Part shown: positions 206 to 44,342 of the stretch, in pieces
Position numbering within the stretch: the first letter of the stretch is position 1
Layout: the number at the start of each line of letters is the position of its first letter
NCBI RefSeq assembly: GCF_006345805.1
Contig: NC_043017.1
Location: 15,810,001 to 15,874,000 of the forward strand
Source of the DNA: Octopus sinensis
Lineage: Eukaryota
Length of the DNA: 64,000 nucleotides
Direction: 5' to 3'
Notes under the pieces: generated by a model
The model's input: the letters and a program-made list of their open reading frames with translations, nothing else
The model's database searches: none
Told to the model about the DNA's origin: nothing
Position numbers and translations under genes: made by a program

Positions 206-390
206 CTCAAATGTTTGTATTGAAGCTTCTGGCACAAATGCCAAGCAATACAGCATGTTGCTTACAAGTTTCTGGCAGAGTGAATTGTGTTATGATGCTG
301 TTTTTTCACTGACGGTGCCCTACTGACCCTACTATACTGTGTAGTCAACAAAATGAAAAACAAACAATACACATGCACAATATATATATA

Positions 391-1152
391 TGGATATGTA
401 ATGTCAGTGTTCATACTCGACAGAGTGTAAGTACCTTGAGAGAAAAGTTGGACATAAGCATCAGTTGTGGTGTGCAAGAGAGACGTTTGCGCTGGTATGG
501 TCATGTGGCGAGAATGGATGAAGATAGTTGTGTGAAAAAGTGCCACACCCTAATGGTTGAGGGAACCTGTGGAAGAGGTAGACCCAGGAAAACCTGGGAC
601 GAGGTGGTGAAGCACGACCTTCGAACTTTAGGTCTTACTGAGGAAATGACTAGAGACCGAGACCTTTGGAAGTATGCTGTGTGTGAGAAGACCCAGCAGA
701 ACAAGTGAGACCATAACCCGTGGCCTCTATCTGGGATGTAGCCAGTCCACTTATGCATACCTTTCCTTCTTGGGACATAAAACTCCACTAGTGAAGACCT
801 GTTGAGGCAAGTGAAAATCGAAATCCTAATCGATCAACATCAATGGAATTTGTAGCTGTGATACCAGTGCCGGTGGCACGTAAGAGAACCATCCGAACGT
901 GGCTGTAGCCAGCGTCGCCCTGACTGGCCTCCGTGCAGGTGGCACGTAAAAAGCACCATCCGATTGTGGCTGTTTGCCAGCCTCATAAAAAGCACCCACT
1001 ACACTCACAGAGTGGTTAGCGTTAGGAAGGGCATCCAGCTGTAGAAACCCTGCCAGATCAGACTGGGCCTGGTGCAGCCTTCTGGCTTCCCAGACCCCAG
1101 TTGAACCATCCAACCCATGCTAGCATGGAAAACGGACGTTAAACGATGATGA
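391..1152 (+). mobile_element. 5'-truncated RTE-clade LINE (ORF C-terminus, 3' UTR and (GAT)n tail) in the last Rab14 intron
   Basis: ORF 373-708 carries RRLRWYGHVARM...GRGRPRKTW..VVKHDL...DRDLW, the typical RTE C-terminal motif. It ends in ccatgctagcatggaaaacggacgttaaacgatgatgatg and is flanked by (TA)n on both sides. A closely similar copy lies at 10113-10640. Confidence 0.9.
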
Positions 1153-1420
1153 TGATATATATATATTTAATTTCAAGACCACAATTCTCAGAAAATATTA
1201 ATACATTATTGAATCTAGAGTAGATATATTATGAATGTAAGCAACATTTCGAGTTTCCTGCCTTTCTTCAAGGGCAAGTACTGTGTGTGTGTGTGTGTAG
1301 CATCTTATGTTCCCGAGTCTTATTAAATGTTTCCCCTGTGATATGAGATGTGAAACTTTACCGTAAATACTTTTTGTTTCTCTGTTGCTTCTTAATGCCA
1401 TTTTCTGTGTCTCTTTGCAG

Positions 1421-7600: not shown

Positions 7601-9032
7601 AGCCACCTCATCAGGGAAGGCAAAAAACATTCGGTATATCTAGTGATTGCCACTTCTTTATGGAAGAAGGCTATTTCTTCAGTTAGTAGATGCTGTCATG
7701 AGATCTCATGTAACCAGCAGCTCTAACTCAAGACAAACAGACTCAACTGCTGATGTTGTTACTAACATGCCCAAGCTGAAAAGCGTCAGATTACAATCAA
7801 ATCCTGTTTATAATTTCTTTTCTGTATACATATATATATAATGTGAAGGTGCATGGCTTAGCAGTTAAGGCATTTGGCTTATGATTGTAAGGTTGTGAGT
7901 TCAATTCCCAGTGACGTGTTGTGTCCTTGAGCAAGACACTTTATTTCATGTTGCTCCAGTCCACTCACCTGGCAAAAATGAGTTACACCTGTATTTCAAA
8001 GGGCTGGCCATGTCACGCTAAATCTCATTAAGGGTCCATGTGTCTAGAGTGCTCAGCCAGTTGTGTGTTAATTTCATAAGCAAGCTGTTCTGTTGATCAT
8101 TGGGACCCTAGTACTATAGTTCTTTAGATTTTATTTTAGTCTGGAGGGAAGGGCTAGAGCCCTTGACCCTTTGCAAGGCCTCTGAGATTAGAGGAGAGAG
8201 AGAGAGTAAGGTCCTTTCAGACCAGGAATGTGATCCAAATGCTTATTATAGAGTGAGCTGCACTAAAGTCACTCCATGGTAGCAAATGGTGGATGAAATG
8301 TTCTGCTTAAGATGATAGCAGGATGTAAAGAGGCAGAACTAATACCACAAAGGACCCAGTCCACCATTGTTGCAGTTTCACCAACCCTAACCCCTTCTCT
8401 TGCGGCTTGATACTGTCCACTGAAAGGATGAATGGTAAAGTTGAGACCAAGGTGGGATTTCAACTCAGAACCAATACTACAAGGTATTTTATTTAAAACC
8501 CTTTCGACAATATCACCCCAACGTGGGTCAGTTTACCCAACTGTGCCACAGGGTTGAAAGCTATTCCATTGTTATAAAAATAGGGAGCACTAATGAAATA
8601 GTTGTGTGAGTGAGTGTAGCTACATCTAGGAGAGGAAGATGTTCCCTCTCTCAGCTGACTTCTCTCTACACACACAGTTGACTTAAGACCCCAGGTTCAG
8701 TTCTCCCCTTAGGTTATTGCCCTTGGTGTTGATTTTCTACAACACTGAGAGGAAAACCCTTATGGGGGTCCATCAACTGGCTAGAAATAGCAGCAAAATC
8801 TCCCTTGTATCACACGCTATACATGAATTGCTAGAAATAACAACCAAATCCTGCTCAAACCATAGAAGCAACATAATTCAATGTAGTCTTAGGTATATAA
8901 ATATATGCAATGGCCATGGCTGGAAAGCATCAAGCAAAAATAATCAAACCTGATTCAACAACAGTAACCAAAGTAAAAAAAAAAGAACCTGGATTTCCTC
9001 AGAACTCTGGGAGAGATTTAATTGTTTTGGTG

Positions 9033-9218
9033 CTAATACTTGTTTTTGATGGGCCATCTGTGGTCCGCATTGCGTCGCCTCAATCTCAGCACGTCACCAT
9101 CGACGTGAATAGCTTGGGCCTTGCTACGGAGGTCGTTGTGGATGTTCATTTTAGCCAGGTTCAGTAAATCGATGTTCCTGCTGTTGTCAACAAGGGCATC
9201 CAGGAGGATGTTGCTGGC
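9033..9218 (-). CDS. CCDC105: CCDC105 exon 6 (terminal)
   Basis: Acceptor ttgttttctttgccag| gives [62 protein letters not shown] possible ATTAAA signal is at 9017-9022 (minus strand). Confidence 0.9.
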   Translation of the reverse strand, partial: ASNILLDALVDNSRNIDLLNLAKMNIHNDLRSKAQAIHVDGDVLRLRRRNADHRWPIKNKY

Positions 9219-12200
9219 CTGGCAAAGAAAACAAAACACAGGTTCAGGGATCAATCCTTCAGTTTGTTCACTGAATTCTGTGGCCATGGGGCTTTGGGTG
9301 GGGCGGGGGAGAATACACCCTTTTCCATGTCCTAGTAACAGCAGTTTTCTATGAAATAAATAGAAATAACAGTTAAACCTTCCTTGTCTTTGAAGAGAAG
9401 GACACATTGTAGAATGCAGTCCTAGATGTATTGTGCCAAAGAAAATGACAGGAACCAACTTGTAGCCCTATTTGAAACTAATGCACTGGAGAATATAGTC
9501 CTAGATACACTATGCCAATGAAGAAGTCAGGAACCAACAATGGGTGTCTCTATATGGTAGCTAAATCTGTTAGAAATATCAGCTAAGTTTCCCTCCAATC
9601 ACACTTTGCTGCTTTTCAAGAGAACACATTGGAAATTATAGTCCTTGGTACACTTGTACTAATTGAAAAAAATAGGATGGTCATGGGTGGAATAACTTGT
9701 TCAGCTCTAACCTGGGGTCAACCATTCTCATTGTGATTAAGGGACAGCCCTTCAGCTATGAGTTGCTATGGTTACCTTATAAGGGAAAATACTGGTTAAA
9801 GCCAGTATTGACATGGCTCAGATGTTAACAAATTCACTTCACAATCACACACTGCTGGGTTCAATCCTGCTGCAGAGCATCTTAAATGTTTTCTGCTGAG
9901 TCCTTATATTATATTGGTTTGTGGCATAATTCAACAAAGAAAGCACTCCATCTGGTGAGAGCCAAATGTTTCTGTTCAAGGGTCACAATTCATGTCTTTG
10001 GGTGCCACTAATAGTTTCAAACTCTTCCTGCTGAACTAAGAACCTCTCAGCACAAAGAGTGGTCTGCGCCTGAAGAACGTGTATTGTGATCCTTAAACAG
10101 AAATACGTATATCATGACCTTCGAACTTTGGGTCTCACTGAGGAAATGACTAGAGACCGAGACCTCTGGAAGTATGCTGTGCGCGAGAAGACTCGGCAGG
10201 ACAAGTGAGACCATAACCCGTGGCCTTCTACATGGGATGTAGCCAGCCCACATGCATACCTTCCCTTCTTGGGACACAAAACTCTACTTGTGAAGACCTG
10301 TTGAGTCAAGTGAGGATGAGAATCGAAATCGATCAATGGAAATTGCAGCTGAGTTACTAGTGCCAGTGGCATGTAAGAGAACCATCCGAATGTGGCCGTT
10401 GCCAGCCTCGCCTGGCACGTAAAAAGCACCATCTGTCCGTGGCCGTTTGCCAGCTCCGTCTGGCACGTAAAAAGCACCCACTACACTCACGGAGTGGTTG
10501 GCATTAGGAAAGGCATCCAGCCATAGAAACACTGCCAGATCAGACTGGGCCTGATGCAGCCTTCTGGCTTCACAGACCCCAGTTGAACCGTCCAACCCAT
10601 GCTAGCATGGAAAGCGGACGCTAAATGATATGATGATGATATATATATATAATACAGACACACACACACGGGTGGGCAAAAGTCATGCACCAAGATTAAA
10701 ACTTGTAATTATATTTGCACATTTCAAAAACTTTTCAAGACTCTAACTTGAGTAAAGTGTTACCAAATAAATACACAATATGGAAAGTCAATGAAACAGT
10801 TGCATGTGTGAGGCATTGAGAAAATAGACCAGAAGGCCATGTTAGAACAAAACATAATTAATTTGGGCTGCAATGAGATTAGACAATTGTGTTATGGAGA
10901 AGTCTAGGGAGGCCATTGGACTTACTCTTACACGCATAGAAGCATACCATGATAAAGGCAGCAAGAAGTTTGAACGGGGCCAGTTCTGTCAACAGAGAAT
11001 AAAGGGATTCACCTTGCGAGCTGAATGTGATCCCATGGTTTATGGTGTTAAGTCAGTGAAATAACACAACTATTCATGTTGAAATAATGCCACTGAAAAT
11101 AGCTGCAAAGTCTTCTGCTAATTGTTGGCTGACCGACTGGAACAGAGATTTGTTTGCTGATGGTCGCAACATTGGGGTTGCCTGCTGACTCACTGCAAAA
11201 AGGTGCACTTTTTTTTTCTTCTTTTGTAGAGATGACAAGGCAATACGATTGGCCACATCATGCATAGATGGAAGACCACTACACCAGCAGAAAGCTCCAC
11301 TGCAGTGCTGTTTTTTCTCAAAGACGGTGCCCAACTGACCCTACTATACTGTGTAGTCAACAAAATCAAAAACAATGCACGCATGTAAAATTAAGAATAT
11401 AAAATGGCAACAATTTACCCATTGCACCGATACACACACACACATACCTACTCTCAATCTCAGGAATGCAGTAAACCAGTAGTTGTTCCATTGGAACCTG
11501 TGACCAGCAAATTTAACAAGTCAACTTATGACCCCTGAAGTGATCCCTAAATTTCCCGTTTTACACCAAATACTCTTATAAACAATGTCCATGGCAACAT
11601 TGGTGATGTTTAGCAACCATTTCTAACGAGCAGTAACTTAGTAACCGTTTCTACAGATTCGTAACTAAACAACCGTCTCTAAGGATTGGTTCTGTAGCAT
11701 TTGTTTCCAAAGCCTTCTGACTTAGCATCCGTTTCCAAGGTCTGTGGGTTGGTAGCAACTGGATTGGTTACTTAGCAACTGTTTTATAAGGTTCAGAGCA
11801 TTAGCAAGCACTTCTAAGCCAAGTGAACATACGAGAGTTCTGTTTACTCTGGGATATGAGGCTACACTTTCACATATTAACTTCTCTAGGAAATGTTTGT
11901 TTCTCAGCAGTTTGGCAGAGAGCAAGGCTGAGAGAAGTTAGTAGTTGATCAACTGGTCAAGGGTTCAAATCAACAGCCAGGTGTTTGTTGCTTTTCTTTT
12001 TTTTTTTCTTATGAACTGTGAAGTGTTTCTGGAAAAACGGAACTGGAACATCTGGGATGTGTTAACAGCCCCCTGGCAGTGAATGCCTAACATATCTTCC
12101 CTCTTCACCTTGCCCTACCCAGGACAACAAGGAACAACTTGCTAGAAATAGCAGTCTTTTCCCAAATTATGTACAAGTACAAATTAGACAATGTAATGGT

Positions 12201-13902
12201 TGCTATAAAAAAAAGACAGGATGGTCACAACTGGAACATTACATCTACTGGACCATTGAGTGATGCAGTGCTGAGATAGAAAGAGGTGGGTTGGTCCCGT
12301 CTACTTACATCTCGAATGTCTTTGGCTCCGGACAAGTCTTGTCCACCATGGCGTTTGTACACCTCCACCATTGGTCTGTTGATGCGTTCTCGACAGGTGA
12401 GATAGGCCGTACGCTGCAAGAGAGGAGGAGTTACAGTAGAGTATAGAGAGAGAGGAGGAGGTACAGTTGCTGAACGTGACTGGAGAACATCTCCAGAGGA
12501 TGCAGAGAGGTTGGTATGGGGCTGCCAGCAATGGAAAGCACTGGTGGCCCTGGTTGGCTCTACACAAGACAACACTTATGGGACCCGGGATGAGCTCGAA
12601 GCAAGAAGAGGCAGAACGGTTGATTATAGAGAAAGAAATCTAGTAGGAACAGAGAGTGGAGAGATGTACATCGAATGTGCTTTGTGATACAACCACACCA
12701 CTACCATGCTACCACCAATACTATAGTAGAGAGAAATACCATTAAATTAGCAAATAGCTAACTATAGATTACCCCACTAAGCACCCTAACAATAGACTCC
12801 CTGTACTTGATACTGAACTTTGGTTAGAGACTGTGAACAATAGAGTGCATCTCCTCCACTCTTATTACATGAAACCTGTAACTTCAAAATATGTTGTTCA
12901 CAAGAACTCAGCTTTGTCACACAACATGAAAATTAACATACTAATAGCAGACCTAGTTAGAATAATGTGTCCCCACTATGCGAACCCTGTGAAATGAAGA
13001 AACATATACAGAACTTCATACACCGCATGCAGTTCTCTGGATATGATCAGAAAGATAGGGTTTTGTGCATACAGGGAGGTTAGAAAGAAATTAGATAACA
13101 TAATACGTAATGATACCAGTGGTACCTGCCCTAGATATAGAAACAAAGAATGGAATAGAATACAAAGAGCTTGTGACAAAGCGAACACATGGTATAAAAC
13201 CAACCAATATCAAGGAGTGATGTTTGTAGAGGCCACAGCCCATGGAGAACTAGCCCGTAGATTTAGAAAAGCTCTGAAGGAGACCAAACTCTACATTAAA
13301 ATTGTTGAAAAGCCAGGGAACTCCGTCAGATCACAACTATGTAGGACATACCCGTTTAAGAATACCATATGCACCAATGATAACTGCATGGTGTGTAGAA
13401 TTAGCCCTGGTATTAACTGTAGAACTCGAAATGTAGTTTACAGTATAAGATGCATAGAAGGTGCTTGTAAGGACATGAACATGATGTACATAGGAGAGAC
13501 GTGTAGGAGCATTGCGGAATGAATAAATGAACGTCTGAGACATTATGACGACAGAAAACAGTCCTCCATACTCTGCCAACATACCAAAGACCACCATGGA
13601 GGTAACTTGGGTCAACCTGACATCCGCATCTTATCCAAACACCCAACACTCAGACAAATACGGGAGTACGTCCTTATAAATGAAACTTACCCAATATTAA
13701 GTAGGAAATATACACAGTAAATACCATACCTCCATACCCACAGTTTACACAGGTAGAGTAGAATAGTTAGTGGACTTTTTTATGTAGATAAATGTATGTA
13801 TGTATGTGGGGGGTGAGTGTGTGTGTATGCCTTTTTTATCATTATTATTTCTTGTTTTTTTTTGTTAAATATTTTATATTTTTTATTTTATTATATATAT
13901 AT

Positions 13903-13934
<32 letters not shown>

Positions 13935-16900
13935 ATAGTTATCGCCATACTAATATGGCAGTCTATAAATATATTTTCTGTATGTAAGCATTTCTAAATG
14001 CTTACATACATATGTAAATAAACAGATCAACATACAGACGGATAGGTGCATAGGTTACAAGAACAGACACATATGGAGACACGGATCCACACACATAAAG
14101 ATGCACATCCATCCATACAAACATGGTACATCGTTACATAACACACACAGATATGCACACACAAGGAGACAGAGGTGCATACATATACAAACACATGCTC
14201 ACACACACATACATAGAAAATACACAAACATGGACAGGCAAGCACATAAATATGCAGGATACATACATACACATGCACACACACACACATAATCACATAT
14301 ATACATACACATGCAAACACACACACATACATACGTACATGTATGCATGTATAAGCACACACACACACACACACTGACCCACACACATGCGCACAAACAA
14401 ACAAAATGGAACGCAGTGTAAATAACGGACAGAGTCAAAACTATTGAAAAAGTTGCAAGATGCAACGAAAATTTTAGGAAAATAAAAATAAGAAATAAGT
14501 GGAAATTTTACCGGTGAGTGTGTTAAATAAGAAGGCAGAAAAAGAAAATGACTCTCCCCAGACACAACAGAATATGCTTCAACACACCAACTCATATAAA
14601 GAATCTTGCAAACCAAATCTAAAAACGAAATACCATTAAATTATTCTTTGACAATTCGGTTTTGTCTGACAAAATGTTGGCCATTTGTAGTGACTTCCTG
14701 TTTTCACCATTATGTATGGACAGTTGTTGCTGAAAGAGAGAGTCAGAGAGGGCAACAGTTAATGCAAGTGGGGTAACAAAACTGGGTGAATATATTGGCA
14801 GTCGTTGGTGAAATACAGATGTGGGTTAACATTAATAATGGGCTAACAGAAAAGCAAGTGAAATGTTAGGGTAAACAGTTAATACCAGGGTATACATAAA
14901 ATAATAGGATGGTAGATTAAAATTTAATACTGGATTAGATATACGGACAGTCGTGCATGAGACGGGCTAACATTTAAGACCAGGTGGGATGCTTAGGGAC
15001 ATGAATATTATTTTGAATGATATCATTAACCACCAGGGCCCCACTTTTTTTTTTTTCAAGGTCTCTAAAAGTGTTGTTAAATGGAAGAAGATTAGAGACC
15101 TGTTGATGTCAATGATGATGATGATGATGATGATGATGACACAAAAACTCTGCCAACTCACCAATAAATTATTTGTTTCGTTCAGTTTTTTACTCAACCC
15201 TTTATTCACTGACAGATGAGCAGCATCTTTCAGGCTCCTCATCTTCTTAATTGCGTTCTCAGCTTCCTCACGGTTCTTACAAGACATCTTCATTGCATCC
15301 CTTGCCTCTCGCAATGAAATCTCAACTTCAGGAGTCTTTACCTCAGCCAATTCAATTGGATTCGGCTGGATTGCCCCCAGTTTAGCATTTGCTGTCTGAG
15401 GCCGCGGCTTCTCCTGCCACAATTTCTGAAAATGGATGCTGGCCACAGATTCATTGGTCAACTCCATGACACGACCTCGCTCCTTTAGGGTAGCTTTTAG
15501 ATTTTTTCGAGCATTTTGAAGAACCTGAAATATAAGGATAGATGGAGAAATATGAGGGGTAGATGGAAGAATATAAGGAAAAGTACAAGAGGGAGAAATA
15601 TGAGGCTGAACAGAGATTGGCAAAATGAAGTTCTTGACTTTGCATTGTCACGTTTCTATTTATTTCAATTAATTTTAATAATAATAAAGAATTTAGTAAA
15701 ATAATTTTGTTTTTATTAAACAGGTGTTTGGAACATAAATTAACATAAAATTTTGATGGAAGGTTTTTAATTCAAATCACTTTAAAACATGAAGTTTGTA
15801 TCATAGATTCAAGGGTGATGGTCTCGGGTGGATTAGAAAGAAAAGGATTTAGAGACAAAGGTGGGTAGAATATCACCATAATACACGAGAAAAAGAAAAT
15901 GACACTGTTGGTTACGGCGATGATCAATGCTATTGATCCGATCAAAAGAACAACCTGCTCACGAAATTAACAAGTGGCTGAGTACTCCACAGACATATGT
16001 ACTCCTTAACGTAGTTCTCAGGAAGATTCAGTGTGACTTTGAAATACAGGTGTAACTCCTTTTCGCCAGCTGGAGCAATGTGGAATAGAGTGTCTTGCCC
16101 AAGGACACCACATGCCTCTTGGAACTGAACCCACGACCTTACAATTGTGAGCCAGATATTCTGATGACTAAGCCACATATCGGCACTAAAAAAAAAAAAA
16201 GGATGAGACACTAGAATACCACTGCAACACAATCACTACGCTACCACTGAACTATGACACAACCACTGCAACCACTTGAATTAAATTAACACAAAAAGGG
16301 GGAATAAAATTGCAAATTACTTGGAGACCATCTTGGACAATGTGTAGTTGGACTTCCAGAACTTTCTTGGAATTTACCAAATGTTTCATCTCAGCACAAA
16401 GTAAATCATCAGCTCCATCTCTGTCCTGCAATAGAGAATGGCATGGATGGATTGACACATTATTGATTACACACCACACTCTACACATACACACTCAAAT
16501 GTGTGTGTATACTACGGGTTTTTTTTCTTTTTTGCATATCATACATGTACAAGGCATTTAGAGTTTATTGATGGAAAGAGAAAACTGCCCAGAGGAGATT
16601 CTGCGTTTGAGTGGAACTTACCTTCCACTGGACTCCACATTTGGAAAACATTGCCGAATATATAGAAAAGGAAAAATTATTTTTAAAAACTGAACAATTT
16701 ATGAACCAACTTTTCCCATTTTGGGTACTACTTGAAAAGAGTGGTCCCGGTGCGTGCATCCGCGCTAGCTAGTCATGACTAGTCGATCCTACAACGGCTA
16801 CCTAGCAAAGTAAATAAAACACAAAATAAATAATTTGGATCTTTTCCTTTTGAACGGCAGTTTGCAACACAATTTCTAGTTAACTAAACACTTTTAAACT

Positions 16901-19900
16901 TTGTATATTGGTAGAATGTGTTTATAAAACATCATTTTTTCTTGGCTTTATTGAGAAAATTCTATAGTTTGTAAGATATTTCCACTTTAATTTCAAGCAT
17001 TTCGGCAATTTTAACCAATCGTGCCGTATGAATATGTCCCTCCTTTAAGAAACAGATTAGGTTTATTTACATTTGTGAAGAAAAAAAGATATCCTTCCCC
17101 CACCCCTAAAACAGATTGAAATGCAATAGATCGATACTAGGGTTATAATTATGGGTGACAATTTCATACGACACCGTTACGGAAAATGGGATTTTTTCTA
17201 GCGGTGTCAAATGAAAATATCACCCATAATTATAACCCTAGTATCGATCTATTGCATTTCAATCTATTTTAAATTTAGGGTTAGATTTAGGGGTGGGGGA
17301 AGGGTATCTTTTTTTCTTCACAAATGTAAATAAACCCAATCTGTTTCTTAAAGGAGGGACATATTCATTATGCACAGAATGTTGTTTACCTCAATGGACT
17401 CCAGCGATTGGTTAAAATTGCTGAAATGCTTGAAATTAAAGTGGAAATATCTTACAAACTATAGAATTTTCTCAATAAAACCAAGAAAAAATGATGTTTT
17501 CTTTTGACACATTCTACCAGTATACGAAGTTTAAAAGCGTTTAGTTAACTAGAAATTGTGTTGAAAACTGCCGTTCAAAAGGAAAAGATCCAATAATTTT
17601 TTTACACAAAATAAATATTTTTTTAAAACAAAGTAAATAAAACACAAAGTAAGGATCGACTAGTCACGACTAGCTAGCGGGGATGCGCGAGTGCGCGCAC
17701 CGGGACCACTCTTCTTAAGTAGTGCCCAATTTTGTTTGTACGTATAAATATTGCCATGGAATAAGTGTTTTCTTGGTTTCAGTGAGAGGCTGTGGTCATG
17801 CTTCAGCATAGCCAGAGACACAAGGAGAAAGCTCCCTCCCAGCCTCCACATCATTTCTTTAACCGACATTTGCCAAATTCTTTCTGACGGAAGAGAAAAT
17901 TTCGAAGACACTCACAGAGTCAGGGGAGATAACCGCAATAAATGAAGTTATGTCCCCTTACATAACTCCACTCTTCGTCAAACGTACACACACGCACGCG
18001 CGCGCGCTTTTTGGTGACGTCTTACAAGACACAGGACGAAGGTTCGAATCTAAGTAAAGATAAGAAACAGCTAACTTTGAGTGACACCTAGTGGTTGTTT
18101 TATTAAATGTCAGGCAAACCGGCAGAGGTAAAGATCATGGACCTTAGCGATTTTGGGGGGTTTTTTTGTCTTTTTTATAGGAACCCATTATATCGAGGGA
18201 GGAGATTCCGATTCTGCAAAAATATCTACAATTCAAAATTTAGATACCCAACAACCCACCTCCCTAAATTTCTTTAATTTTCACTTTTATAAAATTTGTG
18301 GGGCAAAATACAGAGAAAAATACGGAGATTATGATTCTGGAAAAAAAATTCTGTAAAATTTCAATTTTTCAAAAACAAAACGAAAAAATAAAATAAACAA
18401 CCCTCGTCCCCTCCGCCCGAGGACAAGAAGTGAAATGCTTCATGAAGAACATAACCCAACATGTTGTAGTTGAGGGTCTTTGGGAAATTTTTTGCACACA
18501 CACACACACACACACACACACAACAAAATGACAATTTTTTTTCTCTTTGGTAATTCGTATTTAGAAAGTTGATCATCGGTTTGGCTGTTGTTTCTAGCTT
18601 GTCAGATTTCCGGTTGGGGCGGATTTAAATTTTGAAATTTTTTCTTCTTTGGTAATTCGTATTAAAATTTTAAAAACGTGTCTCTGACATGTCCGGTTTC
18701 CCGTTCAGATACTTTTTCCCTCTCCTATTTTATAATTCCATGAATGTGTGAAACATTAGAAGAGAAAAGAATTTAATTCCACTTCGTGTCATTGGACGGA
18801 GGGGAGAGTGGGGGGATGTGTGAAAAATTGAAATTTTACCTTTTTTTTCTTTAGTATTTCTTTTGTATTTTTCTACATATTTTTCTATGCATTTTGCCCC
18901 CCCAAAATTTTTTAAAAATTGAAAATTTAAGAAATTAATGTGGTGGAGGTGAAGGGGAGGCGTTTAAATTTTGAAATGCAGATTTTTTTTCAGATCCGGA
19001 ATCTCCACCCTTAATATAGTGTATTCATGTAAAAATAAAACACCCCAAAAATCCCAAAGTTGGTGCGGTCCATGATCTTTACCACCACCAGAAAACCTAG
19101 AGGACATGGAGTCCCTACAAGGTAAGTCACCTTGTTAGAAATAACAGCAAAATCAACCACAAATCATCGTCTTTAAAAATGTAAAATCTGGTCAGGGGAA
19201 GAGAAACAGGGCCCTCAACACCAATTCACGAGAGGAGGAAAGGATAAGGCAGAGTTAATTAAAGTTAAATGCAAACAAGAAGGGGCGGTCATGGCTGGAA
19301 CATCTTTCCTCAAGGCTGATTTAAAGCAACGCAACAAGTGGTTTGTTTACAAATGAAACTAATTCTGCTAGTTACGGAGTGGTGGTCATGGTTGGTAACA
19401 ACTTCAACTTCTGCTAAAGCGTTTATGTGTTTTTGGTGTTTTGTGAGAGAGAGCAAACATCTGGTGCACCCGAGTGGTGCACCCGAAGTGCTTTTGTTGA
19501 AACAGGATTCACGGGTGAATGGAGATTTGTTTGGCTTTAAACACTTTACTCAGATTACAATCAAATAATCCAATAATCCACGCCCGGAATAACAAACGTT
19601 CTGAGAGATTGGCCTTCAATGATAGACTGTAGGTAGTGGAACAGGGGTGAAATGAGGGTAGATAGACAAGTGGTCCACTCTGTTGTCACCCAATTTGACC
19701 CCAACACCTGGTCCTTGGGCATCTTTAGCTGGGTCCACTCAGCTGCAGACATTCGAGTTAAATTTCTGCTGTGAGAAACCCTTCTTCCCACCCTCACCTC
19801 ACCAACAGTCTTCCAACCCCCAACCCCACCCCCACCCCACACCCCACCTGCTGTTCCTCGTCTGATTAATATGCAAGAAATGAAAAAAATCTCTCCACTA

Positions 19901-20450
19901 CATTAAGCGCCACCCCCTCCCCCGCCTTCTGCATCCTGCATTGTGTCTACGTCAACCAAGTCAGCTATAAAATATTCTCCAGTCAAATCACCTGAAATAC
20001 CAGGATTAAGTTGACCTTCTTCTTCTTTTTTTTTTCCTTTGTGACTAAACAATTCTTGGTATTTGAGAAATATTTCCTTTTCTATGTTTTTTTTCTTTGC
20101 ATTTATTTCAAGTTTATAAGAAAAAAATGTCTAAAATGATTTCAAAATTAATCGAGCATGAATTTTGCAACAACCATGACAACCTAACATGTTCAGATAC
20201 TCGTTTGTGTAATAACAAACAACAATAATAATAATAATAATACCAAGTGTGGCTAATGCCAGTGCCACCTGACTGGCGCCCGTGCCAGTGGCACGTAAAA
20301 AGCACCCATTACACGCTCAGAGTGGTTGGCGTTAGGAAGGGCATCCGGCTGTAGAAACCTTGCCAGATCAGATTGGAGCCTCCTGGTTTGCCAGCCCTTC
20401 GTCAAACTGTCCAACCCATGCCAGCATGGAAAGCAGACGTTAAATGACAA

Positions 20451-20483
<33 letters not shown>

Positions 20484-21347: not shown

Positions 21348-24300
21348 ACGATGGACTTTTTTCAGTTTCTATCTATGAAATCCACTCATTAGGCTTTGGT
21401 CAGCCCAGGGTTATAGTAGAAGACACTTGCCCAAAGTGCCATGGAGTGGAACTGAACCAGGAACCATGTGGTTGAGAGGCAAACTTCCTACCACACAGCC
21501 ACGCCTGGTTTATATGTTTTTCTTTTCTTTTTCGTTTTTTGTTGTTGTTTCCAGTCTGTCAAAAGATGAACAATGAGAACTTTTCTAATTTTAAAATGAA
21601 ATAAAAATAAAAAGAAAGAAGAAAAATTGAGAAAAAACAAAACAAAAAGATTTGACATCCTGACTTAGCATCAGCAGCCTTACCGTCCTAATTAGTCAGT
21701 GTGGATTGTCATGTATGGACTGTCCTGTGTGAATGAGGGAACAAACAGGATATACTAGTCTACTTCGCTGGTGGGTGACCTTTTGGAGTTTGTCAGGTAC
21801 TGGAGGGGGGAGGGATTGGTGCAATCGCTATGGCGACAGAAAACTGCAACAATAATGCTGCTGCCAAGAATGGAAATTATGCATCATCATTATTTGATGG
21901 CAAATAAATGAAATTATTATTATTATTATTTATTACTTTCCTCTTTGGCCCAGGCCTCATCAACTTTTTCAAGTTTCACTTGAAAAGGAAGGTGAGAGTA
22001 GAGAGGGAAGTGATGTCTGGTAGCAAGTTTATTGAGTGGTGGGCGAATGTCGCAAGATTGGCCAGTGTGAAAGGACCAATTCTGAGGATACACCTGTGAA
22101 AAATTAAAAGAAAATATAAAAGGAGAAAGGGGCTCTCTACCCCCCTTTTGACCAGGCTCCCGTGGCTTTTATGGGTTTTTCCACGAGTAACCTTTTGAAG
22201 CGCCTCCCCCTATTGGGAGTTTTAGTTGTTACTTACTTTTCGTTGTCATCCTGTTTTTGTTCACGGACCTTTTTCAAACGGACAAAACCCTTTGCAACTT
22301 TCGTCCTGTGTTTTGTCCCTTTATGTTTTAAATGATTTTTGTTAGCCCTTGTGGCCAATAAACGAACGAATTATTATTATTATTATTATAAGGTGGCGAG
22401 CTGTCAGAACCGTTAGCACACCAGGCAAAATGCTTAGCGGCATTTCTCCTGTCAGAATGTTCTGAGTTCAAATTCTGCTGAGGTCAACTTTGCCTTTCAT
22501 CCTTTCAGGGTCAATAAATTGACCCTGAAATACTGGTGTCGATGTAATCAAATAGTCCCCTCCCTCAAAATTTCAGGCCTTGTGCCTATGGTAGAAAGGA
22601 TTATTATTATTATTATTGAGAAAGCAGCACATGCCATCAAAGTGACACTGGGGTACAAATATACGAAGCCCAGTATACCCATCATGACTACCCGTCTGAT
22701 AAGGGTACACCAGGCACATGCATCACAACCATATGTGCGCGACATGGTGATCTCATATCAAAATAAACAGCACATGACTTTGCAGGTGGGGCCCAGTTAG
22801 AATTTTCTTCTGGTCGAGTAGCCCATCCTGCTCAAAAGGTCCCTGAATAAGGGTTGTCTAAGGATGTTGAACGAACCACCCATGTTTCCAAAGGTAAATT
22901 ATCCAAACCGCTAAGAATTCCTTTCAACACACAGCTATGATGCTCCCCCACTACTTCTGCTCGTGATCAGAGATGCACATATCATCAGCCACTAAGGGAC
23001 ATAATCAACTGGTTAAGGTCAAACAACTGACAAGCAAATCTGTGGTATTGAGCAGAATATTTGCTGTAGCCCATCCTTTATACCAAGACAAAACAATGTA
23101 CATGATAACACTTCCAATCAGTTAAGATCAGAAGCCATGAGAGCCACTGCCTGGTACTGCGCCAGAGCATTTATTATTATTCGTAGTAGTAGTAGTAGTA
23201 GTAATAGTAGTAGTAGTAGTAGTAGTAGTAGTAGAAGGTGTAGGAGGGGAGGCGGGCTGTGAATTGGCAGAATCCGGTGGAGCATCCTGTCGTGTTTGTT
23301 CCAGTTCTTTATATTCTGAGTTTAAATGTGACCCAAGTCAACATTATTGCCCATCGGTGGGCAATAAAACAAAGTACCAGTTAAATGCTGGGGGTGAATG
23401 CAATCGACTTACCCCCCTCCCCACACAAAATTGCTGGTCTTGTGCCTTAAATAAAAAAGCAAAATTTATTTCTCAGCTTTTGATGCTGTTTAACCCCAGG
23501 TCACCCTCCATCCAGTGACCACTTTTGATAAAAGACATTCCAATGATGAGCAGCTTGTGTTTTTTTTTCCTTTTAATTTGATTTTTTATTATTATTATTA
23601 TTATATCTGGGAGTACAACTTTGATTAATGTGTCCTTCCTTTTTGAAAGACGGTAAAGTACAACTGATGGGAATTTAGCTGTGAAAAAGGAAATGGATAA
23701 TTCAAATCTATGTAGGAGGAGGGAGGGAGGAAGTCATCAGAGGACAGTGGTGGTGGCGGTGGAGTTGATTGTTGTTGTTGTTGTCGTCATTATTGCAGTG
23801 GTTGGTGGTGGTGGTGGTGGTATCATTGTGTTGATTGCAGTGGAGGTGCTGCTGCTGCTAGTGCTGCTGTTGCTGTTGAGTGAAGCAGTCTTCGTCCCAG
23901 AGCTCGCAAGATGGGAGAAGTCTGAAACGTGGTCCTTTGCTATTTGTAAGACCCTCAGAAGAGAAAGCAGGTCAACCCCCGACACCGAGAGCATCCACGG
24001 ATGGATGAATGTGCATCCAGGCTCAGCGGTTGCGTAGGAAGTCAGGGACAAAAAACAGGAAGAAAGAGTGAGAGAAAGTTGGGGCGAAAGAGTACAACAG
24101 GGGTCACCACCACCCCCTGCCGGAGCCTCATGGAGCTTTAGGTGTTTTCGCTCAATAAACACACACAACGCCCAGTCTGGGAATTGAAACCGCGATCCTC
24201 CAACCGCGAGTCCGCTGCCCTAACCACTGGGCCATTGCACCTCCTGCTGCTGCTCAGGGTGGTGTTAATAATAATCCCTGCCCTCGGAGATATATTTCCA

Positions 24301-26122
24301 CACAACTACTGTGTTTATCCATTGATTAGTTTCGAGAAGTGGGGGACAGAGCCCCACAAATTCCTGCATCTTCCCTACACCTTGTTTGATAAAGTAGGGC
24401 AAATGTATGGATTATAATTGATAATGTCAACTAATCATGGGAGTAATTAATCATCTGTGAGGAAGGGTGGGCATGGATGGAATCAGGAAGACTGTGTACT
24501 TAAAAAGTCACATCACAGCTACCTTGCCCTGAGTTTGATCCCACTATCTGGCACTTTACACAAGTGTCTTCTACCTTAACCTTGGGCTGACTAATAAAAT
24601 TTAATAGACAGAAATTCTTTGGAAACCTGTTATTCTGTGTGCTTGTCCTCCTTCCAGCACTTGACAGCCAGTGTTGGTGTGTTTATATCCATGTAACTTA
24701 GCAGTTCAGCTATAGAGTCCAAGAAAATAATTACCAGGCTTTAAAAAAAAATGTACTGGGTTGATTTGTTTGACTAAAGACTCTTGAAGGCAGTGCTCCA
24801 GCATGGCCACAGCCTAATGACTGAAACAAGTAGCAAGATAGAATATCAAAGAGATATTGATTATCCCAACTGACCTAATTGGGATGTGTCATTAAAAGCA
24901 CCACAGCACGGTGGTCAGTGTCTCGAGAGATTCTCTTGGGAGATGAAATTCCATCAACACCAGCAGATGTCACTGTTGTATCACACGGTACCACCCTGAA
25001 CTGCAGATCATCACCAACAGATCGTCAACCACCAAATGCCAGATAGAAAATTCAGTCAAACCACAAATAAATATTTTATTTATCCACAGACAACCAGCTT
25101 TACGGGTCATCACTGTCTGTTTAGCCAGTGTTAAAGTAGACAACTGTGCTGGCCATGTGATGTGTATGGATGAGGGCAGCTGTGTAAAGAAGTGCTGATC
25201 TCTGTGGAGGGAACCCTGTAGTAGAGGTAGACCCAAGAAGAGGTGGTGAAACATGATCTTTGGATTTTGAGTCTCATAGAGGCAAATGATGAGTGACCGA
25301 GACCTTTGGCAATAGGCTTGAGAAGACCAATCAAGCCAAGTGAAATTGTAGTCACGGCTGATGCTGGGGTCACCTAACTGGCACTTGTGCCAGTGGAATG
25401 TGAAAGGCACCTTCTGAGCATTGGATCTCACGGAGGCAAAGTGGACAATGTCAGTGGGACATGACTGTTAGGCCTCATGGAGGCAATGACAAATGACAAA
25501 GGCTTGACATATATATATGCATGTGTGTGTGTGTGATGTATATAAATCTATGTATGCAGGGGGCTCTCTAATTGATTCACTGAGTTCTGTGACATCTGCA
25601 ATTACCAGACCAAAATCTTTCAGAGAGGCTGAGAATCAACAACAACAACAGCAACAACAACAACACCTGATGTTTGTGACATGATGTATAATGTTGCTGT
25701 TGTTGTTTAATGCAGGATCACGTCTGATCCAGCACCTATGATCAAGATCAATCCACCCATGACCATCCCATCTCTTTAGAGTTTTATCTAAGACAACATC
25801 ATTTAACATGTCCATCCCAGTTTGTGATATGTAGGAGGTATAGCTGCTATTTCTAACAAGTGGATCATCGACCTCTTTTCTACCTTGTGTACTTTTGTGC
25901 CGTTCAAGGCCTTATCTCTTGTCTTTCTACTTTTTTTTATCTTCTACACCAGTTACTGTGTGTATATGTGCAGTCATGGGTATATATGCATGTACAAACA
26001 GGTCTGTACATAAGGGCAAGTATGAGCAAGCATGCACACACACACACACACACACACACAAAGCAAACACATGCACAGTAAACTACACACAAACATACAC
26101 ACACACACGTGTGTGTGTGTGT

Positions 26123-26176
<54 letters not shown>

Positions 26177-28899
26177 TATATATATATACGTTTAAATATT
26201 TGTTGTGCAAGATTTTTTTGGCTAAACTGGCAATATGACCATTCCGAAATATAACAATATATATATATATATGTATGTATAAATATATATATTATATATA
26301 GTTCACAGTAAGCACACACATATTATACAGTACATACACATACACATACATGCATAGTACACACACATGTATAAAACACATACACAGTACATAATACAAA
26401 CACATACGTGTATAGTACATACACTCGCACACACACACAACAGACACACACTCACACATATATACACAACACACAAACAGTGCCCCTCCCACACACACAC
26501 TGTCTTATAAGAAACAGTGATGTTGTGGCAGTAATCCATTTCCTGAGAGAAATACTGATATTAAAGTTAATGTCCCTGTAGTTTAAAGGGGAGAGAGAGA
26601 AGACAGTCCAGTGTGGTCCCAGTATATAGCTGGTATTGTATTAACTGGGATTTGAATTCAGTTGTGTGGGGGCAGAATATACCACACTAGCTATTGTTAA
26701 TAAGGGGGACCCCTGGCCAGGAGGTAGAGGGCTGAGGTATGGGCATGGATCTGGTGTGTGGTATTGGGGTATGGATTTCGATTATGGCCCTGGGGTATGT
26801 CCCTGGGGTATGGCCCTGGGGTATGGCCCTGGGGTATGGCCTTGGTACATGACCCTGGCGTTTGGCCATCAGCTAATTGAGTTGTGTGGACATTAACTGG
26901 CTTTTTACCTCATCCAACACCAACAACAACAATAGCCATTGACAACAGAACCTCACCACCACAAACACCATCATCACCTCCACCTTCACCACCACCATCT
27001 CCACCACCATCACCATATACTCACCACTAACAACAATCCAATTAGGTGACCTACATGTGGTCTTCAGTCTCCTAGAAACAGCAGCCAAAATTTTTCCAAA
27101 TTACACTCTGCAACTTTAAAATAATAAATGAAGGCCACATTAGGCAGTTTAATTATAGATACAGAAAAACACCTAACAGACAATGGTGGTCATAAGTGGA
27201 TCATCTCTGATCATATGCCTGTCCAATCAGTCTCAAACCTAGGGTTAAACAACACCACACATGGTAGTGTTTTCTCGCCCCAGCCTCCGTTAATGCTACA
27301 CAGAAATGGCTTAATTAATCATAATGCTAGAGAGGGATGCAGGGGTGGGAGAGGAGAAGCAGTAGTAACCCCTTCCACCCGTCTTCCACTTCCTTTCTAC
27401 ATCAGCAGACAAAAGCAACTGTAATCCGATCCGTTTATGCTGCAGTAGGGACCAATGTGAACCAATAACTCCCAGTTAGCATCAAAGACTCACTGGAATG
27501 GTAAATCTGCTTCTTCACTTCACTGCTTCATCGTTTTTGTCTTGAAATTGCTAATCCACCAACAAGAATGCTTTCTAATTTAGGTGGAAGACCAACAATT
27601 TTGAGGGGAGGGGGCAAGGCGATACCATCCACCTCAGTCTTTCACTGCAACTGTATTTTAGTAACCCAAAACAATGGAAAGCAAAACTGACGCTCACAGG
27701 ATTTGAACTCAGGATATAATAATAATAAAAATAAACACAGAACAAATACTGCTAGGAATTTTTTTCCATCTTCTAACAATTCTGCCAGCTTACCATTTTA
27801 ATAATAAATGCTTGAAATTTTGGCCCAGATCCACAGCAGTTTCTGAGGGGAAAAGGAAGTTGATTACATCAACCCCCAGTGTCTGACTGGTAATTTATTT
27901 TATTGACCCTGAAGGGGATGAAAGACAAAGTCAACTTCAGTGGAATTTGAACTCAGAATGTAAAGACAGACAAAATCCTGGTAAGCATTTTGTGCCAATA
28001 ATTCTGCCAGCTCTCCACCTTAATAATAATAATCCTTTCTACTAATGGTATTCGAGGAAGGGATTAAGTATATTAGATCAACCCCAGTGTTCAACTGGTA
28101 CTTATTTAATCGACTCTGAAAGGATAAAAGGCAAAGTCAACCTTGGCAGAATTTGAACTCAGAATGTAAAGACAGACAAAAGCATTTCACCCAGCGTGCA
28201 ACCAATTCTGCCAGCTTGCCTGCTTGGCAGGTCCAGAATAGCCAGGAAAGTAATGGATGGTAGGAAAGAATGAATAGCATGGCACTGGAGGCTGCTGGCA
28301 GTAAGACAGCTATGAATGCAAGACTCCAAGAGTTACAACAATCCCTGAGATAATAGTAATGATGATGATGATGATGATACCCTCTGCCAAAGGCACAAAG
28401 CCTGAAATCTTGTGAGGAGAGGAAAAGTCAATTACATCAATCCCAGTGAGTGGATTTGATAGATGGAAACTGAAAGAAGCCCATCGTATGTGTGTGTGTC
28501 TGTTTTTGTCTCCCACCATTTCTTGACAATTGTAATTGGTTTGTTTATGTCCCTGTAACTTAGAAGTTCAGCAAAAAGAGGCCAATAGAATAGTTTTGGA
28601 GGGCAAAACTGTAATCTCTATTGTTGAAAAGATAGGAATCTTAGGAAATTTTTGAAGAAAATGAAACAAACAGAAAAGGGTGGGGTGGGGTGCATACGTG
28701 ACACGTCCACTCTTTTACTTGTTTCAGTCATTTGACTGTGGCCATGCTGGAGCACCGCCTTTAATCGAGCAACTTGACCCCAGTACTTATTCTATCGGTC
28801 TCTTTTGCTGAACCGCTAAGTGACGGGGACATAAACACACAAGCATCGGTTGTCAAGCAATGCTAGGGGGACAAACACAGACACACAAACACATACACG

Positions 28900-30720: not shown

Positions 30721-30820
30721 GTTTGACAGTCGACATGTTTAGTTTATTTTTTAGGGAGTCGCGTCGGTATCTTAGCAACAGCTTCAAATAACAGTTCCGC
30801 AGAAAGGCTCTTACGTCAAC
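30721..30820 (-). promoter_or_regulatory. Putative CCDC105 proximal promoter with an X-box (GTATCTTAGCAAC, 30767-30779), a forkhead-like TGTTTA and a CRE-like TTACGTCA (30811-30818)
   Basis: Locally CpG-retaining segment 220-310 bp upstream of the ATG. The motif set is typical of motile-cilium/sperm genes. TSS unknown. Confidence 0.55.
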
Positions 30821-35800: not shown

Positions 35801-35986
35801 TGGGTATAAGAGTGTGAATGGAGAGTAACAGGTGGTTAGGGGTGGGTGGGGTTGAGATGAATGTAGGGAGTGGTGAACAGGAGTGGGGGTGTAACTTGAG
35901 AAATATAAGTATGTTGTTGCGCACGTGTGTGACAGAGAAGTTATGCCCCTTTGTTTTTTTCCCAAGTCAATGCTGCTGTCTCTCTA

Positions 35987-36262
35987 CAGTTGTGAGGCCC
36001 TGGAGAGACAGAGTACACAACGGAAGACCATATGTCTTCCAACCAGACTCAAGACTAGGACAACCCAAGCGTGGATGTGCACCAACCTCCATGATCATGT
36101 TCTCCCAGACACATGGCCTCCTGGCTCACCACACCTCAATCCACTGGACTATTTACTTAGGAGTCTTAGTCAAGGTCAATCACCCCCATCACAACACACA
36201 ATCTGTCTAATTACATCCAAACTTGAAAAAGATCATCAGATTCAGGCTTGTCAATACTTTTG
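35987..36262 (+). mobile_element. Degenerate Tc1/mariner transposase fragment (second and third catalytic-residue region)
   Basis: TVVRPWRDRVHNGRPYVFQPDS, then after a frameshift TTQAWMCTNLHDHVLPDTWPPGSPHLNPLDY (WPPxSPDLNPLDY motif). It continues the same family as 1-205. Confidence 0.85.
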
Positions 36263-36440
36263 ACCCCCTACTTAAACAGCCACTCATGCTAACGGGAGAT
36301 CCATTGAATAGGTGTAACAAAAGGGGTCCTCAAGGCTATTTGGCTCAATTTGTTTCCAAATGCAGTTTTTCTTTGATGAGATACAAACTTTTTTTCTAAA
36401 TTCATTAGAAATAACCTCAAAAATCTGACACATCCTATAC

Positions 36441-44213: not shown

Positions 44214-44277
<64 letters not shown>

Positions 44278-44304
44278 CGTTTTTAACTCTCCCCAGACAC
44301 AACA

Positions 44305-44342
<38 letters not shown>

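What the first reader, a model, noticed from the sequence alone, without database searches (positions are those of the whole stretch)
11585..11823. Phased 14/28-bp array of tandem X-box-like motifs inside an intron of a ciliary gene
Seen directly, ten consecutive 14-mers in exact register: GATGTTTAGCAACC, ATTTCTAACGAGCA, GTAACTTAGTAACC, GTTTCTACAGATTC, GTAACTAAACAACC, GTCTCTAAGGATTG, GTTCTGTAGCATTT, GTTTCCAAAGCCTT, CTGACTTAGCATCC, GTTTCCAAGGTCTG. Two more pairs follow from 11767 (GTTACTTAGCAACT...). Type A (about GTTACTTAGCAACC) alternates with type B (about GTTTCTAAGGATTG), and both resemble the RFX X-box. The units have diverged heavily but kept the spacing, which suggests an old minisatellite whose unit is a transcription-factor site. 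That would be a tandem-repeat-born homotypic RFX enhancer in an RFX-type target gene. The 28-bp period is not a multiple of 3, so a coding repeat is unlikely.
Basis: partly seen in the sequence, partly recalled or inferred. Interest (0 to 1): 0.8.

Follow-up and report, generated by a model that had tools for sequence, protein, structure and literature searches.

The report
Decayed 28-bp repeat in sperm-gene intron
This is a real but heavily decayed 28-bp tandem repeat in the last intron of a sperm-flagellum tektin-like gene; it looks only loosely like RFX binding sites, needs no function to explain it, and is probably ordinary intronic repeat DNA.

Summary
From 11605, ten 14-mers (five 28-mers) sit in exact register. 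A 22-nt unit with a 6-nt deletion follows, then two more 28-mers, the last shifted by +1. Self-similarity at lag 28 is 46% (z = 6.6 against shuffles), although Tandem Repeats Finder reports nothing.

The array lies in the last intron (9219-12308, minus strand) of a five-exon gene. The spliced product is a Tektin-family protein closest to CCDC105/TEKTL1, a sperm doublet-microtubule inner protein. So "intron of a ciliary gene" is correct.

The RFX reading is weak:
- Only two 13-mers (11633, 11767) come within one mismatch of GTNRCC-N-RGYAAC.
- Type B units are not X-box-like.
- Six of the seven half-sites point the same way.
- The X-box-like half of the unit is no better conserved than the other half.
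- The kept register is compatible with neutral decay, P(no indel) about 0.4-0.7.

Similar cryptic arrays are common in this window. No other copy, inverted partner, reading frame or RNA structure was found.

Two things keep the enhancer idea alive at about 12%. The array is the densest half-site cluster in the 64 kb. A similar 13-mer also lies 262 nt upstream of the gene's start codon. Conservation and genome-wide copy number could not be tested.

The parts
11585..11604 (+). Lead-in partial unit, ATGTCCATGGCAAC + ATTGGT. It has a perfect right half-site GGCAAC with an AT spacer and a degenerate left half (2 mismatches to the X-box consensus).
11605..11744 (+). Five 28-bp units in exact register (ten 14-mers, A/B alternating), starting at 11605, 11633, 11661, 11689 and 11717.
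   Evidence: identity to consensus 0.64-0.86; nhmmer E 0.006-0.098 per unit
11745..11766 (+). Irregular 22-nt unit, TGGGTTGGTAGCAAC TGGATTG. It is a 28-mer with a 6-nt deletion and contains GTTGGTAGCAAC (0-nt spacer, 2 mismatches).
   Evidence: (D4, spacing 78)
11767..11794 (+). Unit 6, GTTACTTAGCAACT GTTTTATAAGGTTC. It holds the best X-box-like site of the array, GTTACT-T-AGCAAC, the only one with both half-sites intact.
11795..11823 (+). Last, most degenerate unit, register shifted by +1 (TTAGCAAG ... CTTCTAAGCC).
   Evidence: (D1, spacing 79)
9219..12308 (-). Host intron: the last intron of the CCDC105/TEKTL1-like gene. The array lies 485-723 nt downstream of its 5' splice site. The intron also holds dispersed-repeat copies ('TE-X' at 9347-9451, 9519-9755 and 12104-12273), a LINE-tail copy (10113-10650) and another repeat fragment (11306-11375).
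12309..12413 (-). Exon 4 of the gene model ([35 protein letters not shown]). Acceptor cag, donor gtaagt.
9033..9218 (-). Last exon ([19 protein letters not shown]...HRWPIKNKY*). Its junction with exon 4 aligns without a gap to sea-urchin CCDC105 residues 357-444.
30767..30779 (-). Promoter-proximal 13-mer GTTGCTAAGATAC (gene sense strand), 262 nt upstream of the ATG. It is 11/13 identical to the reverse complement of type A (GTTGCTAAGTAAC) and lies in a block identical in the related species. It is only possibly related to the array.

Best explanation
The array is a decayed intronic minisatellite. A 28-bp founder unit, itself an older duplication of a near-palindromic 14-mer of the form GTTRCT-W-AGYAAC, was amplified head-to-tail by replication slippage or unequal exchange to about eight copies. 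These copies have since drifted by point substitution to about 50% mutual identity, with two small indels near the 3' end. It sits in the 3.1-kb last intron of a sperm-flagellum tektin-like gene, among other repeat debris. It most likely has no function. Its resemblance to RFX X-boxes is inherited from the near-palindrome of the single founder unit, so it is not independent evidence from many sites. Shown: the periodicity, the unit structure, the intronic position, the non-coding and unstructured nature, and the absence of other copies in the window. Inferred: the mode of origin and the neutrality.
For: The period-28 signal has z = 6.6 while units are only 51% identical, and TRF is silent. Adjacent units are not markedly more alike than distant ones (13-21 of 28 matches), as expected for an old array that is no longer homogenised. 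Cryptic periodic arrays of the same strength are common here: 31 clusters with z >= 5.5 in 64 kb, about eight of them not microsatellite-based. TRF lists 133 rows. The X-box-like half (positions 1-14, mean majority frequency 0.70) is no better conserved than the other half (0.67), and the B core GTTTC.AA.G is as conserved as AGCAAC. Only 2 sites are within 1 mismatch of GTNRCC-N-RGYAAC, against a chance expectation of 5.1 such matches per window. Six of seven half-sites are in one orientation, so most units lack the inverted partner. The kept register is compatible with neutrality: 4 non-simple-sequence indels per 236 substitutions between species gives 0.4-1.0 expected indels in 140 bp, P(0) = 0.39-0.70. 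There is no open frame, no Rfam match and no unusual RNA fold (z +1.5 and -0.65). No inverted partner or second copy was found.
Against: The array is the single densest cluster of X-box half-sites in the window: 7 in 239 bp against 0.39 expected, and only 0.09% of windows reach this count. This is weakened because the copies share one ancestor. The host gene belongs to the class of axonemal or sperm genes that RFX factors regulate in other animals (my own knowledge, not tested here). Among the best non-array matches to the unit profile is a 13-mer 262 nt upstream of this gene's own start codon, next to a conserved TGACGTAA. Neutrality is inferred, not measured: the orthologous intron could not be obtained.
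Confidence: 0.7

Rival explanations
1. RFX-bound homotypic enhancer. Here the repeat supplies several single-spacer X-box variants (GTTACT-T-AGCAAC type) that recruit an RFX factor in spermatids or ciliated cells. They would boost transcription of the tektin-like gene together with a similar promoter-proximal site.
For: The host gene is a CCDC105/TEKTL1 orthologue. The array is the densest half-site cluster in 64 kb. Sites 11767 and 11633 are within one mismatch of the consensus. Single-nucleotide (T) spacer X-box variants are functional in C. elegans, and a synthetic 3x tandem of such a variant drives often weak expression (bioRxiv 10.1101/2021.02.03.429678). The promoter carries GTTGCTAAGATAC at -262 from the ATG, sharing the 9-mer GTTGCTAAG with the array, 31 nt downstream of a TGACGTAA at -306. 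Both are identical in the related species. About 1.4 sites of that score are expected per window, so the chance of one falling in a 500-bp promoter zone is about 0.01, a calculation made after seeing the site.
Against: Only 2 of about 16 14-mers are good matches and type B is not X-box-like. Most half-sites lack an inverted partner. The X-box half shows no extra conservation. The position is atypical: an intron 18.7 kb downstream of the ATG, whereas known X-boxes are mostly promoter-proximal. The 28-bp spacing equals 2.7 helical turns, so sites would not share a DNA face (inference). The two species are too close (about 87% identity everywhere) for the promoter block to stand out. No paper in the searchable library links CCDC105/TEKTL1 to RFX.
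Confidence: 0.12
2. Part of, or seeded from, a transposable element. Either the array is the internal or subterminal repeat region of a dispersed element not otherwise sampled in this window, or it grew from the 17-nt core (TTAGCTGYYATTTCTAR) of the abundant about 230-bp dispersed repeat here called TE-X.
For: The best non-array match to the unit profile (15.7 bits, 29373 minus strand) is the TE-X core. Unit 1 shares TTAGC....ATTTCTAAC with it. TE-X copies themselves carry two direct copies of this core (29379 and 29527; 8781 and 8831). TE-X is abundant (at least 14 significant copies in 64 kb), with copies in the same intron, one only 280 nt from the array.
Against: A 15.7-bit match is expected 0.12 times per window by chance. 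The TE-X profile does not hit the array or its upstream flank at all. The middle of the unit differs consistently, CAACC in the array against CTGCT in TE-X. There are no terminal inverted repeats and no inverted array nearby. There is no second copy of the array or its flanks in the window.
Confidence: 0.13
3. A functional array for something other than RFX, for example another transcription factor that recognises TTAGCAAC or GTTTCYAAGG, or an intronic splicing or antisense-RNA element.
For: The B core GTTTC.AA.G is as well kept as the A core. The array lies 485-723 nt from the 5' splice site.
Against: There is no structural signal in RNA on either strand and no Rfam family. No specific factor is indicated, and the conservation level equals what neutral decay of a repeat predicts.
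Confidence: 0.04
4. A chance pattern with no true repeat.
For: TRF reports nothing.
Against: Lag-28 z = 6.6, with harmonics at 56 and 84. Six units each match the unit profile while the rest of the window does not.
Confidence: 0.01

Closest known systems
Degenerate intronic minisatellites (old VNTR-type arrays of 10-100-bp units)
   Same: Head-to-tail copies of a 28-bp unit, non-coding, intronic and surrounded by transposon debris. Other cryptic arrays of similar strength occur about every 8 kb in this window.
   Different: It is much more decayed than the arrays usually catalogued: 51% pairwise identity, below TRF's detection limit. Copy-number polymorphism, the hallmark of active VNTRs, could not be examined.
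RFX X-box promoter motif (GTNRCC N1-3 RGYAAC), including the single-spacer variant of C. elegans klp-6/cwp-4 regulated by DAF-19M
   Same: Type A (GTTACT-T-AGCAAC) is an imperfect inverted repeat of two 6-nt half-sites with a 1-nt T spacer, the same layout as the klp-6 variant. The host gene is axonemal.
   Different: Known X-boxes are single, promoter-proximal and conserved between species. Here the sites are intronic and tandem, mostly degenerate, and most keep only one half-site. No binding or conservation evidence exists.
Regulatory VNTRs that present a variable number of transcription-factor sites, e.g. MNS16A at TERT with GATA-1 sites (PMC5438627); the HRAS1 28-bp and INS VNTRs are cited from memory only
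   Same: The concept is the same: a tandem repeat whose unit contains a transcription-factor site gives a homotypic site cluster.
   Different: Those arrays have near-identical units, are polymorphic, and have reporter or association evidence. This one is decayed and has no functional evidence.
Transposon-internal short repeats that seed minisatellites
   Same: A dispersed repeat in the same intron (TE-X) carries duplicated copies of a 17-nt core that resembles the array unit at both ends, TTAGC....RTTTCTAR.
   Different: The similarity is not significant (0.12 expected per window), and the TE-X profile does not align to the array or its flanks.

Membership tests
Minisatellite / tandem repeat | Head-to-tail copies of one unit with a fixed period | tested here: met
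   Lag-28 identity 0.463, z = 6.6; five units in exact register plus three with small indels
Minisatellite / tandem repeat | Unit similarity high enough for standard detection (TRF, about 70% or more) | tested here: not met
   TRF returns 0 rows at minimum score 30; mean pairwise identity is 51%
Minisatellite / tandem repeat | Copy-number variation between individuals or species | not testable with these tools
   No second assembly of this locus could be obtained
RFX X-box | Two inverted half-sites, GTNRCC and RGYAAC | tested here: inconclusive
   Two sites have 1 mismatch or fewer (11633, 11767) and about five more have 2 mismatches. Six of seven exact half-sites are in one orientation. Type B fails.
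RFX X-box | Spacer of 1-3 nt, usually 2 (AT) | tested here: met
   The good sites have a 1-nt T spacer, which is allowed but is the minority class
RFX X-box | Promoter-proximal position | tested here: not met
   The array is in the last intron, about 18.7 kb downstream of the ATG at 30505
RFX X-box | Bound by an RFX DNA-binding domain | not testable with these tools
   Needs EMSA, DAP-seq or ChIP
RFX X-box | Conserved in orthologous genes | not testable with these tools
   Contigs of the related species cover only the promoter and exon 1. Attempts to reach the intron failed.
Homotypic transcription-factor-site cluster / enhancer | Local excess of sites for one factor | tested here: met
   7 half-sites in 239 bp against 0.39 expected, the window maximum. 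The sites are not independent because they are repeat copies.
Homotypic transcription-factor-site cluster / enhancer | Open chromatin or regulatory activity | not testable with these tools
   No chromatin or reporter data
Dispersed repeat / transposable-element part | Further copies elsewhere | tested here: not met
   No other copy in the 64 kb by blastn or nhmmer. Genome-wide copy number is not testable. The metagenome scan gave only unrelated repeats.
Dispersed repeat / transposable-element part | Homology to a recognisable element (TE-X) | tested here: inconclusive
   Core resemblance of 15.7 bits, expected 0.12 per window. The TE-X profile does not hit the array.
Coding repeat | An open reading frame through the units | tested here: not met
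   3-6 stops in every frame; the longest open stretch is 38 codons
Structured RNA / miRNA cluster | Stable fold or a family match | tested here: not met
   z = +1.5 (gene sense strand) and -0.65; no Rfam hit in 8000-17000 overlaps the array
Host gene: Tektin family, CCDC105/TEKTL1 subfamily | Pfam Tektin above the gathering score; closest solved relatives are CCDC105 | tested here: met
   The spliced 383-aa model scores 73.6 bits (cut-off 34.3). PDB matches: 8snb CCDC105 E 3e-57, 8i7o TEKTL1 1.5e-19, 8otz 2.8e-15.

The most novel reading that the evidence does not exclude
A minisatellite whose founder unit happened to be a single-spacer X-box variant has been co-opted as an intronic homotypic RFX enhancer of a sperm-axoneme microtubule-inner-protein gene. 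It would work together with a nearly identical promoter-proximal site (GTTGCTAAGATAC at -262), and would be an example of a cilia/sperm cis-regulatory module born by tandem duplication.
Probability: 0.1. Interest if true: 0.55.

Novelty: new member of a known kind. Interest (0 to 1): 0.2.

Why it matters
As it stands, it matters little. It is one more decayed intronic minisatellite in a repeat-rich animal genome, and the evidence fits neutral decay. If RFX did bind and use it, it would be a clean natural case of an enhancer created by tandem amplification of one binding site, in a gene class (sperm and ciliary axoneme) whose RFX regulation is otherwise promoter-proximal. Useful by-products are a gene model for the CCDC105/TEKTL1 orthologue and a candidate promoter module (CRE plus an X-box-like 13-mer) that can be tested directly.

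Tried and rejected
1. TRF at minimum score 30 found nothing in 10500-13000. The array is too diverged, so autocorrelation was used instead.
2. Self-blastn and a unit-profile nhmmer search of the window found no second copy.
3. A search for an inverted partner, terminal inverted repeats or MITE structure found only short 70-83% pairs that are not concentric, so they were judged chance.
4. Three routes to the orthologous intron of the related species all failed: exact look-up of window ORFs, a homology search with the exon-4 ORF, and a concatenated six-frame query of 11395-12310.
5. A metagenome scan for TTAGYAAC at 28-bp spacing returned 97 loci. All were unrelated 7-, 14- or 28-bp repeats, with at most 19 of 28 positions matching the consensus when 8 are fixed by design. 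This was uninformative.
6. Origin from the dispersed repeat TE-X: the by-eye colinear blocks upstream of the array were not confirmed by the TE-X profile. The core resemblance has p about 0.1.
7. 'Spacing kept by constraint' was rejected. BLAST gave 0.24 gap openings per mismatch. A global alignment gave 0.072, and only 0.017 outside homopolymers and microsatellites, so no indel in 140 bp is unremarkable.
8. Phylogenetic footprinting of the promoter failed because the two species are too similar for any block to stand out.
9. Structured RNA, tRNA/SINE head and miRNA readings gave nothing.
10. Literature searches for a CCDC105/TEKTL1-RFX link, and for the Logan run accessions to name the related species, found nothing.

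Full report
**Observation.**
- The ten in-register 14-mers start at 11605 and end at 11744.
- 11745-11766 is a 22-nt unit, a 28-mer lacking 6 nt (D4: spacing 78).
- 11767-11794 is a further good unit.
- 11795-11823 is a last, poor unit shifted by +1 (D1: spacing 79).
- 11585-11604 is a partial lead-in (ATGTCCATGGCAAC).

Autocorrelation of 11606-11823 against 500 dinucleotide-preserving shuffles gives identity 0.463 at lag 28 (z = 6.6). The z-scores are 3.3 at lag 14 and 3.4-3.7 at lags 42, 56 and 84. Units are 51% identical on average: A-A 0.50, B-B 0.51 and A-B 0.36. The consensus is GTTACTTAGCAACC GTTTCTAAAGATTA. Tandem Repeats Finder finds nothing at its most permissive setting.

**Context.** The minus strand carries a gene. 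Single exons gave colinear sub-threshold Pfam Tektin hits. I assembled five exons with canonical splice sites: 30113-30505, 16321-16425, 15162-15524, 12309-12413 and 9033-9218.
- The 383-aa product scores 73.6 bits on Pfam Tektin, against a cut-off of 34.3.
- Its closest solved relatives are CCDC105/TEKTL1 chains from sperm doublet microtubules: sea urchin 8snb (E 3e-57), mouse 8i7o and bovine 8otz.
- The alignment runs without a gap across the exon 4/exon 5 junction. The array therefore lies in the last intron (9219-12308), 485-723 nt downstream of its 5' splice site.
- About 30 residues are missing between exons 3 and 4, so one small exon is probably still to be found in 12414-15161, outside this intron.

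'Intron of a ciliary gene' is thus correct, and more precisely a sperm-flagellar microtubule inner protein. The only close relative found is a set of anonymous Logan whole-genome contigs (SRR11869384-94), about 84-87% identical in non-coding DNA.

**What the array is not.**
- It is not coding: every frame has 3-6 stops.
- It is not a known or evidently structured RNA.
- It has no inverted partner or terminal inverted repeats.
- It has no second copy in the window by blastn or a unit profile.
- It is not exceptional as a repeat. A scan for cryptic periodicity finds 31 clusters with z >= 5.5 in the 64 kb, about eight of them not microsatellite-based. TRF lists 133 rows.
- The intron is largely repeat debris. 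It contains several copies of an abundant dispersed repeat of about 230 bp that I call TE-X (at least 14 significant copies in the window; in this intron at 9347-9451, 9519-9755 and 12104-12273). It also holds a LINE-tail copy (10113-10650) and another repeat fragment (11306-11375).

**X-box resemblance.** I compared the array with GTNRCC(N0-3)RGYAAC. This consensus, and the existence of functional single-T-spacer variants, are confirmed in bioRxiv 10.1101/2021.02.03.429678.
- Only 11633 (GTAACT-T-AGTAAC) and 11767 (GTTACT-T-AGCAAC) are within one mismatch, both with a 1-nt spacer. About five more sites have two mismatches.
- One-mismatch matches are expected 5.1 times per window for this spacer class.
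- Type B (GTTTCTAAGGATTG) shares only the left GTTTC.
- Of seven exact half-sites in the array, six are RGYAAC in the same orientation. Only 11767 has both halves.
- The X-box-like half of the unit is no better conserved across units than the other half, 0.70 against 0.67 mean majority frequency.

The array is nevertheless the window's maximum for half-site density: 7 against 0.39 expected, top 0.09% of windows. That is what tandem copies of one half-site-bearing unit must produce, so it is not independent evidence.

**Spacing.** Between this genome and the related species, a global alignment of 1,760 non-coding and exon-1 columns shows 236 substitutions and 17 indel events. Of these, 13 lie in or next to homopolymers or microsatellites. 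The array has no such runs. At 0.017 indels per substitution and 0.15-0.40 substitutions per site since amplification, 0.4-1.0 indels are expected in the 140-bp in-register stretch, giving P(0) of 0.39-0.70. No constraint is needed. Jukes-Cantor distances are 0.79 for the average unit pair and 0.30 for the closest pair, against 0.12 between the species. These imply that the array predates the species split, a prediction that can be tested.

**Possible origins and links.** A profile of the six in-register units has its best non-array hit (15.7 bits) on the TE-X core TTAGCTGCCATTTCTAAC. Its second-best hit (11.3 bits) is at 30767, which is 262 nt upstream of this gene's ATG. Simulations give 0.12 and 1.4 expected hits per window at those scores.

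The TE-X link is not supported further. The TE-X profile does not align to the array or its upstream flank, and the unit's middle differs consistently.

The promoter site is more intriguing. It reads GTTGCTAAGATAC on the gene strand and is 11/13 identical to the reverse complement of type A. It lies 31 nt downstream of a TGACGTAA, one of two in the window, and both are identical in the related species. However, that whole promoter is about 87% conserved, so nothing stands out, and the coincidence was noticed after the fact. No paper in the searchable library links CCDC105/TEKTL1 to RFX.

**Verdict.**
- Most likely (about 0.70): a neutral, decayed intronic minisatellite whose founder unit was a near-palindrome that happens to resemble a single-spacer X-box.
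- RFX-enhancer reading: about 0.12.
- TE-part or TE-seeded origin: about 0.13.
- Other function: about 0.04.
- Chance pattern: about 0.01.

The decisive tests are orthologous intron alignment, genome-wide copy search, RFX binding and chromatin state. None could be run with the collections available here. Attempts to reach the orthologous intron through protein look-ups failed, and a metagenome scan returned only unrelated repeats.

Noticed in passing
window 9033-30505 (minus strand): A five-exon model of a Tektin-family CCDC105/TEKTL1 orthologue (383 aa): exons 30113-30505, 16321-16425, 15162-15524, 12309-12413 and 9033-9218. About 30 residues (sea-urchin 325-356) are unaccounted for, so a small exon probably lies in 12414-15161. 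Intron 1 is about 13.7 kb.
   Followed up: partly
window 30767-30818 (gene sense = minus strand): Candidate promoter module: TGACGTAA (CRE-like, 30811-30818, one of only two in the window) and the X-box-like GTTGCTAAGATAC (30767-30779). They lie 306 and 262 nt upstream of the ATG, and both are identical in the related species' contigs L001-L005. In that species the preceding 13 nt read GTTACTTAACGCT, so the pair resembles one A/B unit of the intronic array.
   Followed up: partly
window 9762-9775 (minus strand): A perfect canonical X-box with an AT spacer, GTAACCATAGCAAC, lies in the same last intron, about 545 nt upstream of the last exon. It directly abuts the 5' end of a TE-X copy (9519-9755). 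Three other perfect consensus matches occur at 4279, 35467 and 57990.
   Followed up: partly
window, e.g. 9519-9755, 29334-29524, 25674-25896, 54140-54386, 27026-27274, 19084-19345, 8740-8965, 48587-48789, 23462-23685, 12104-12273: An abundant dispersed repeat of about 230 bp ('TE-X'), with at least 14 significant copies or fragments in 64 kb. It has conserved blocks CCATGACCATCC and GAGGGAGA-TTAGCTGCTATTTCTAACAGGTTGA. Some copies carry a second direct copy of the 17-nt core. Its class (SINE or MITE) was not determined.
   Followed up: partly
window 296-1166 and 10113-10650; also 20289-20474, 32901-33069, 33577-33758, 35260-35440: Copies of a LINE-like 3' region. ORF 373-708 reads ...RRLRWYGHVARMDE...GRGRPRKTWDEVV..., and the tail ends in ATG/TA/AC microsatellites. 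The copy at 10113-10650 is 84% identical to 613-1166.
   Followed up: partly
window 13043-13522 (+): A 159-aa ORF ending ...[29 protein letters not shown] looks, from memory, like a GIY-YIG nuclease motif of a Penelope-like element. Pfam gave no hit at E <= 0.1.
   Followed up: partly
window 39813-41882 (+): A 689-aa open reading frame, serine- and proline-rich and probably disordered, with no Pfam domain and no exact match on record. It is probably a large exon of a neighbouring gene on the opposite strand to the tektin-like gene.
   Followed up: partly
window 44913-45488 and 44241-44468: Young tandem duplications: a 278-bp unit x2.1 at 99% identity and a 65-bp unit x3.5 at 94%. These are far fresher than the array under study.
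   Followed up: no
window 35925-36263 (+): An ORF with ...WPPGSPHLNPLDYLL..., which from memory resembles the C-terminal motif of a Tc1/mariner transposase. It is probably a transposon remnant.
   Followed up: no
L006-L102 (JGI/ENA metagenome contigs): Tandem repeats with units of 7, 14 or 28 bp containing TTAGYAAC are surprisingly frequent in metagenome contigs (97 loci), for example TTAGTAACCGTTAT (L048) and TTAGTAACCCTTTC (L047). None is demonstrably related to the array.
   Followed up: partly
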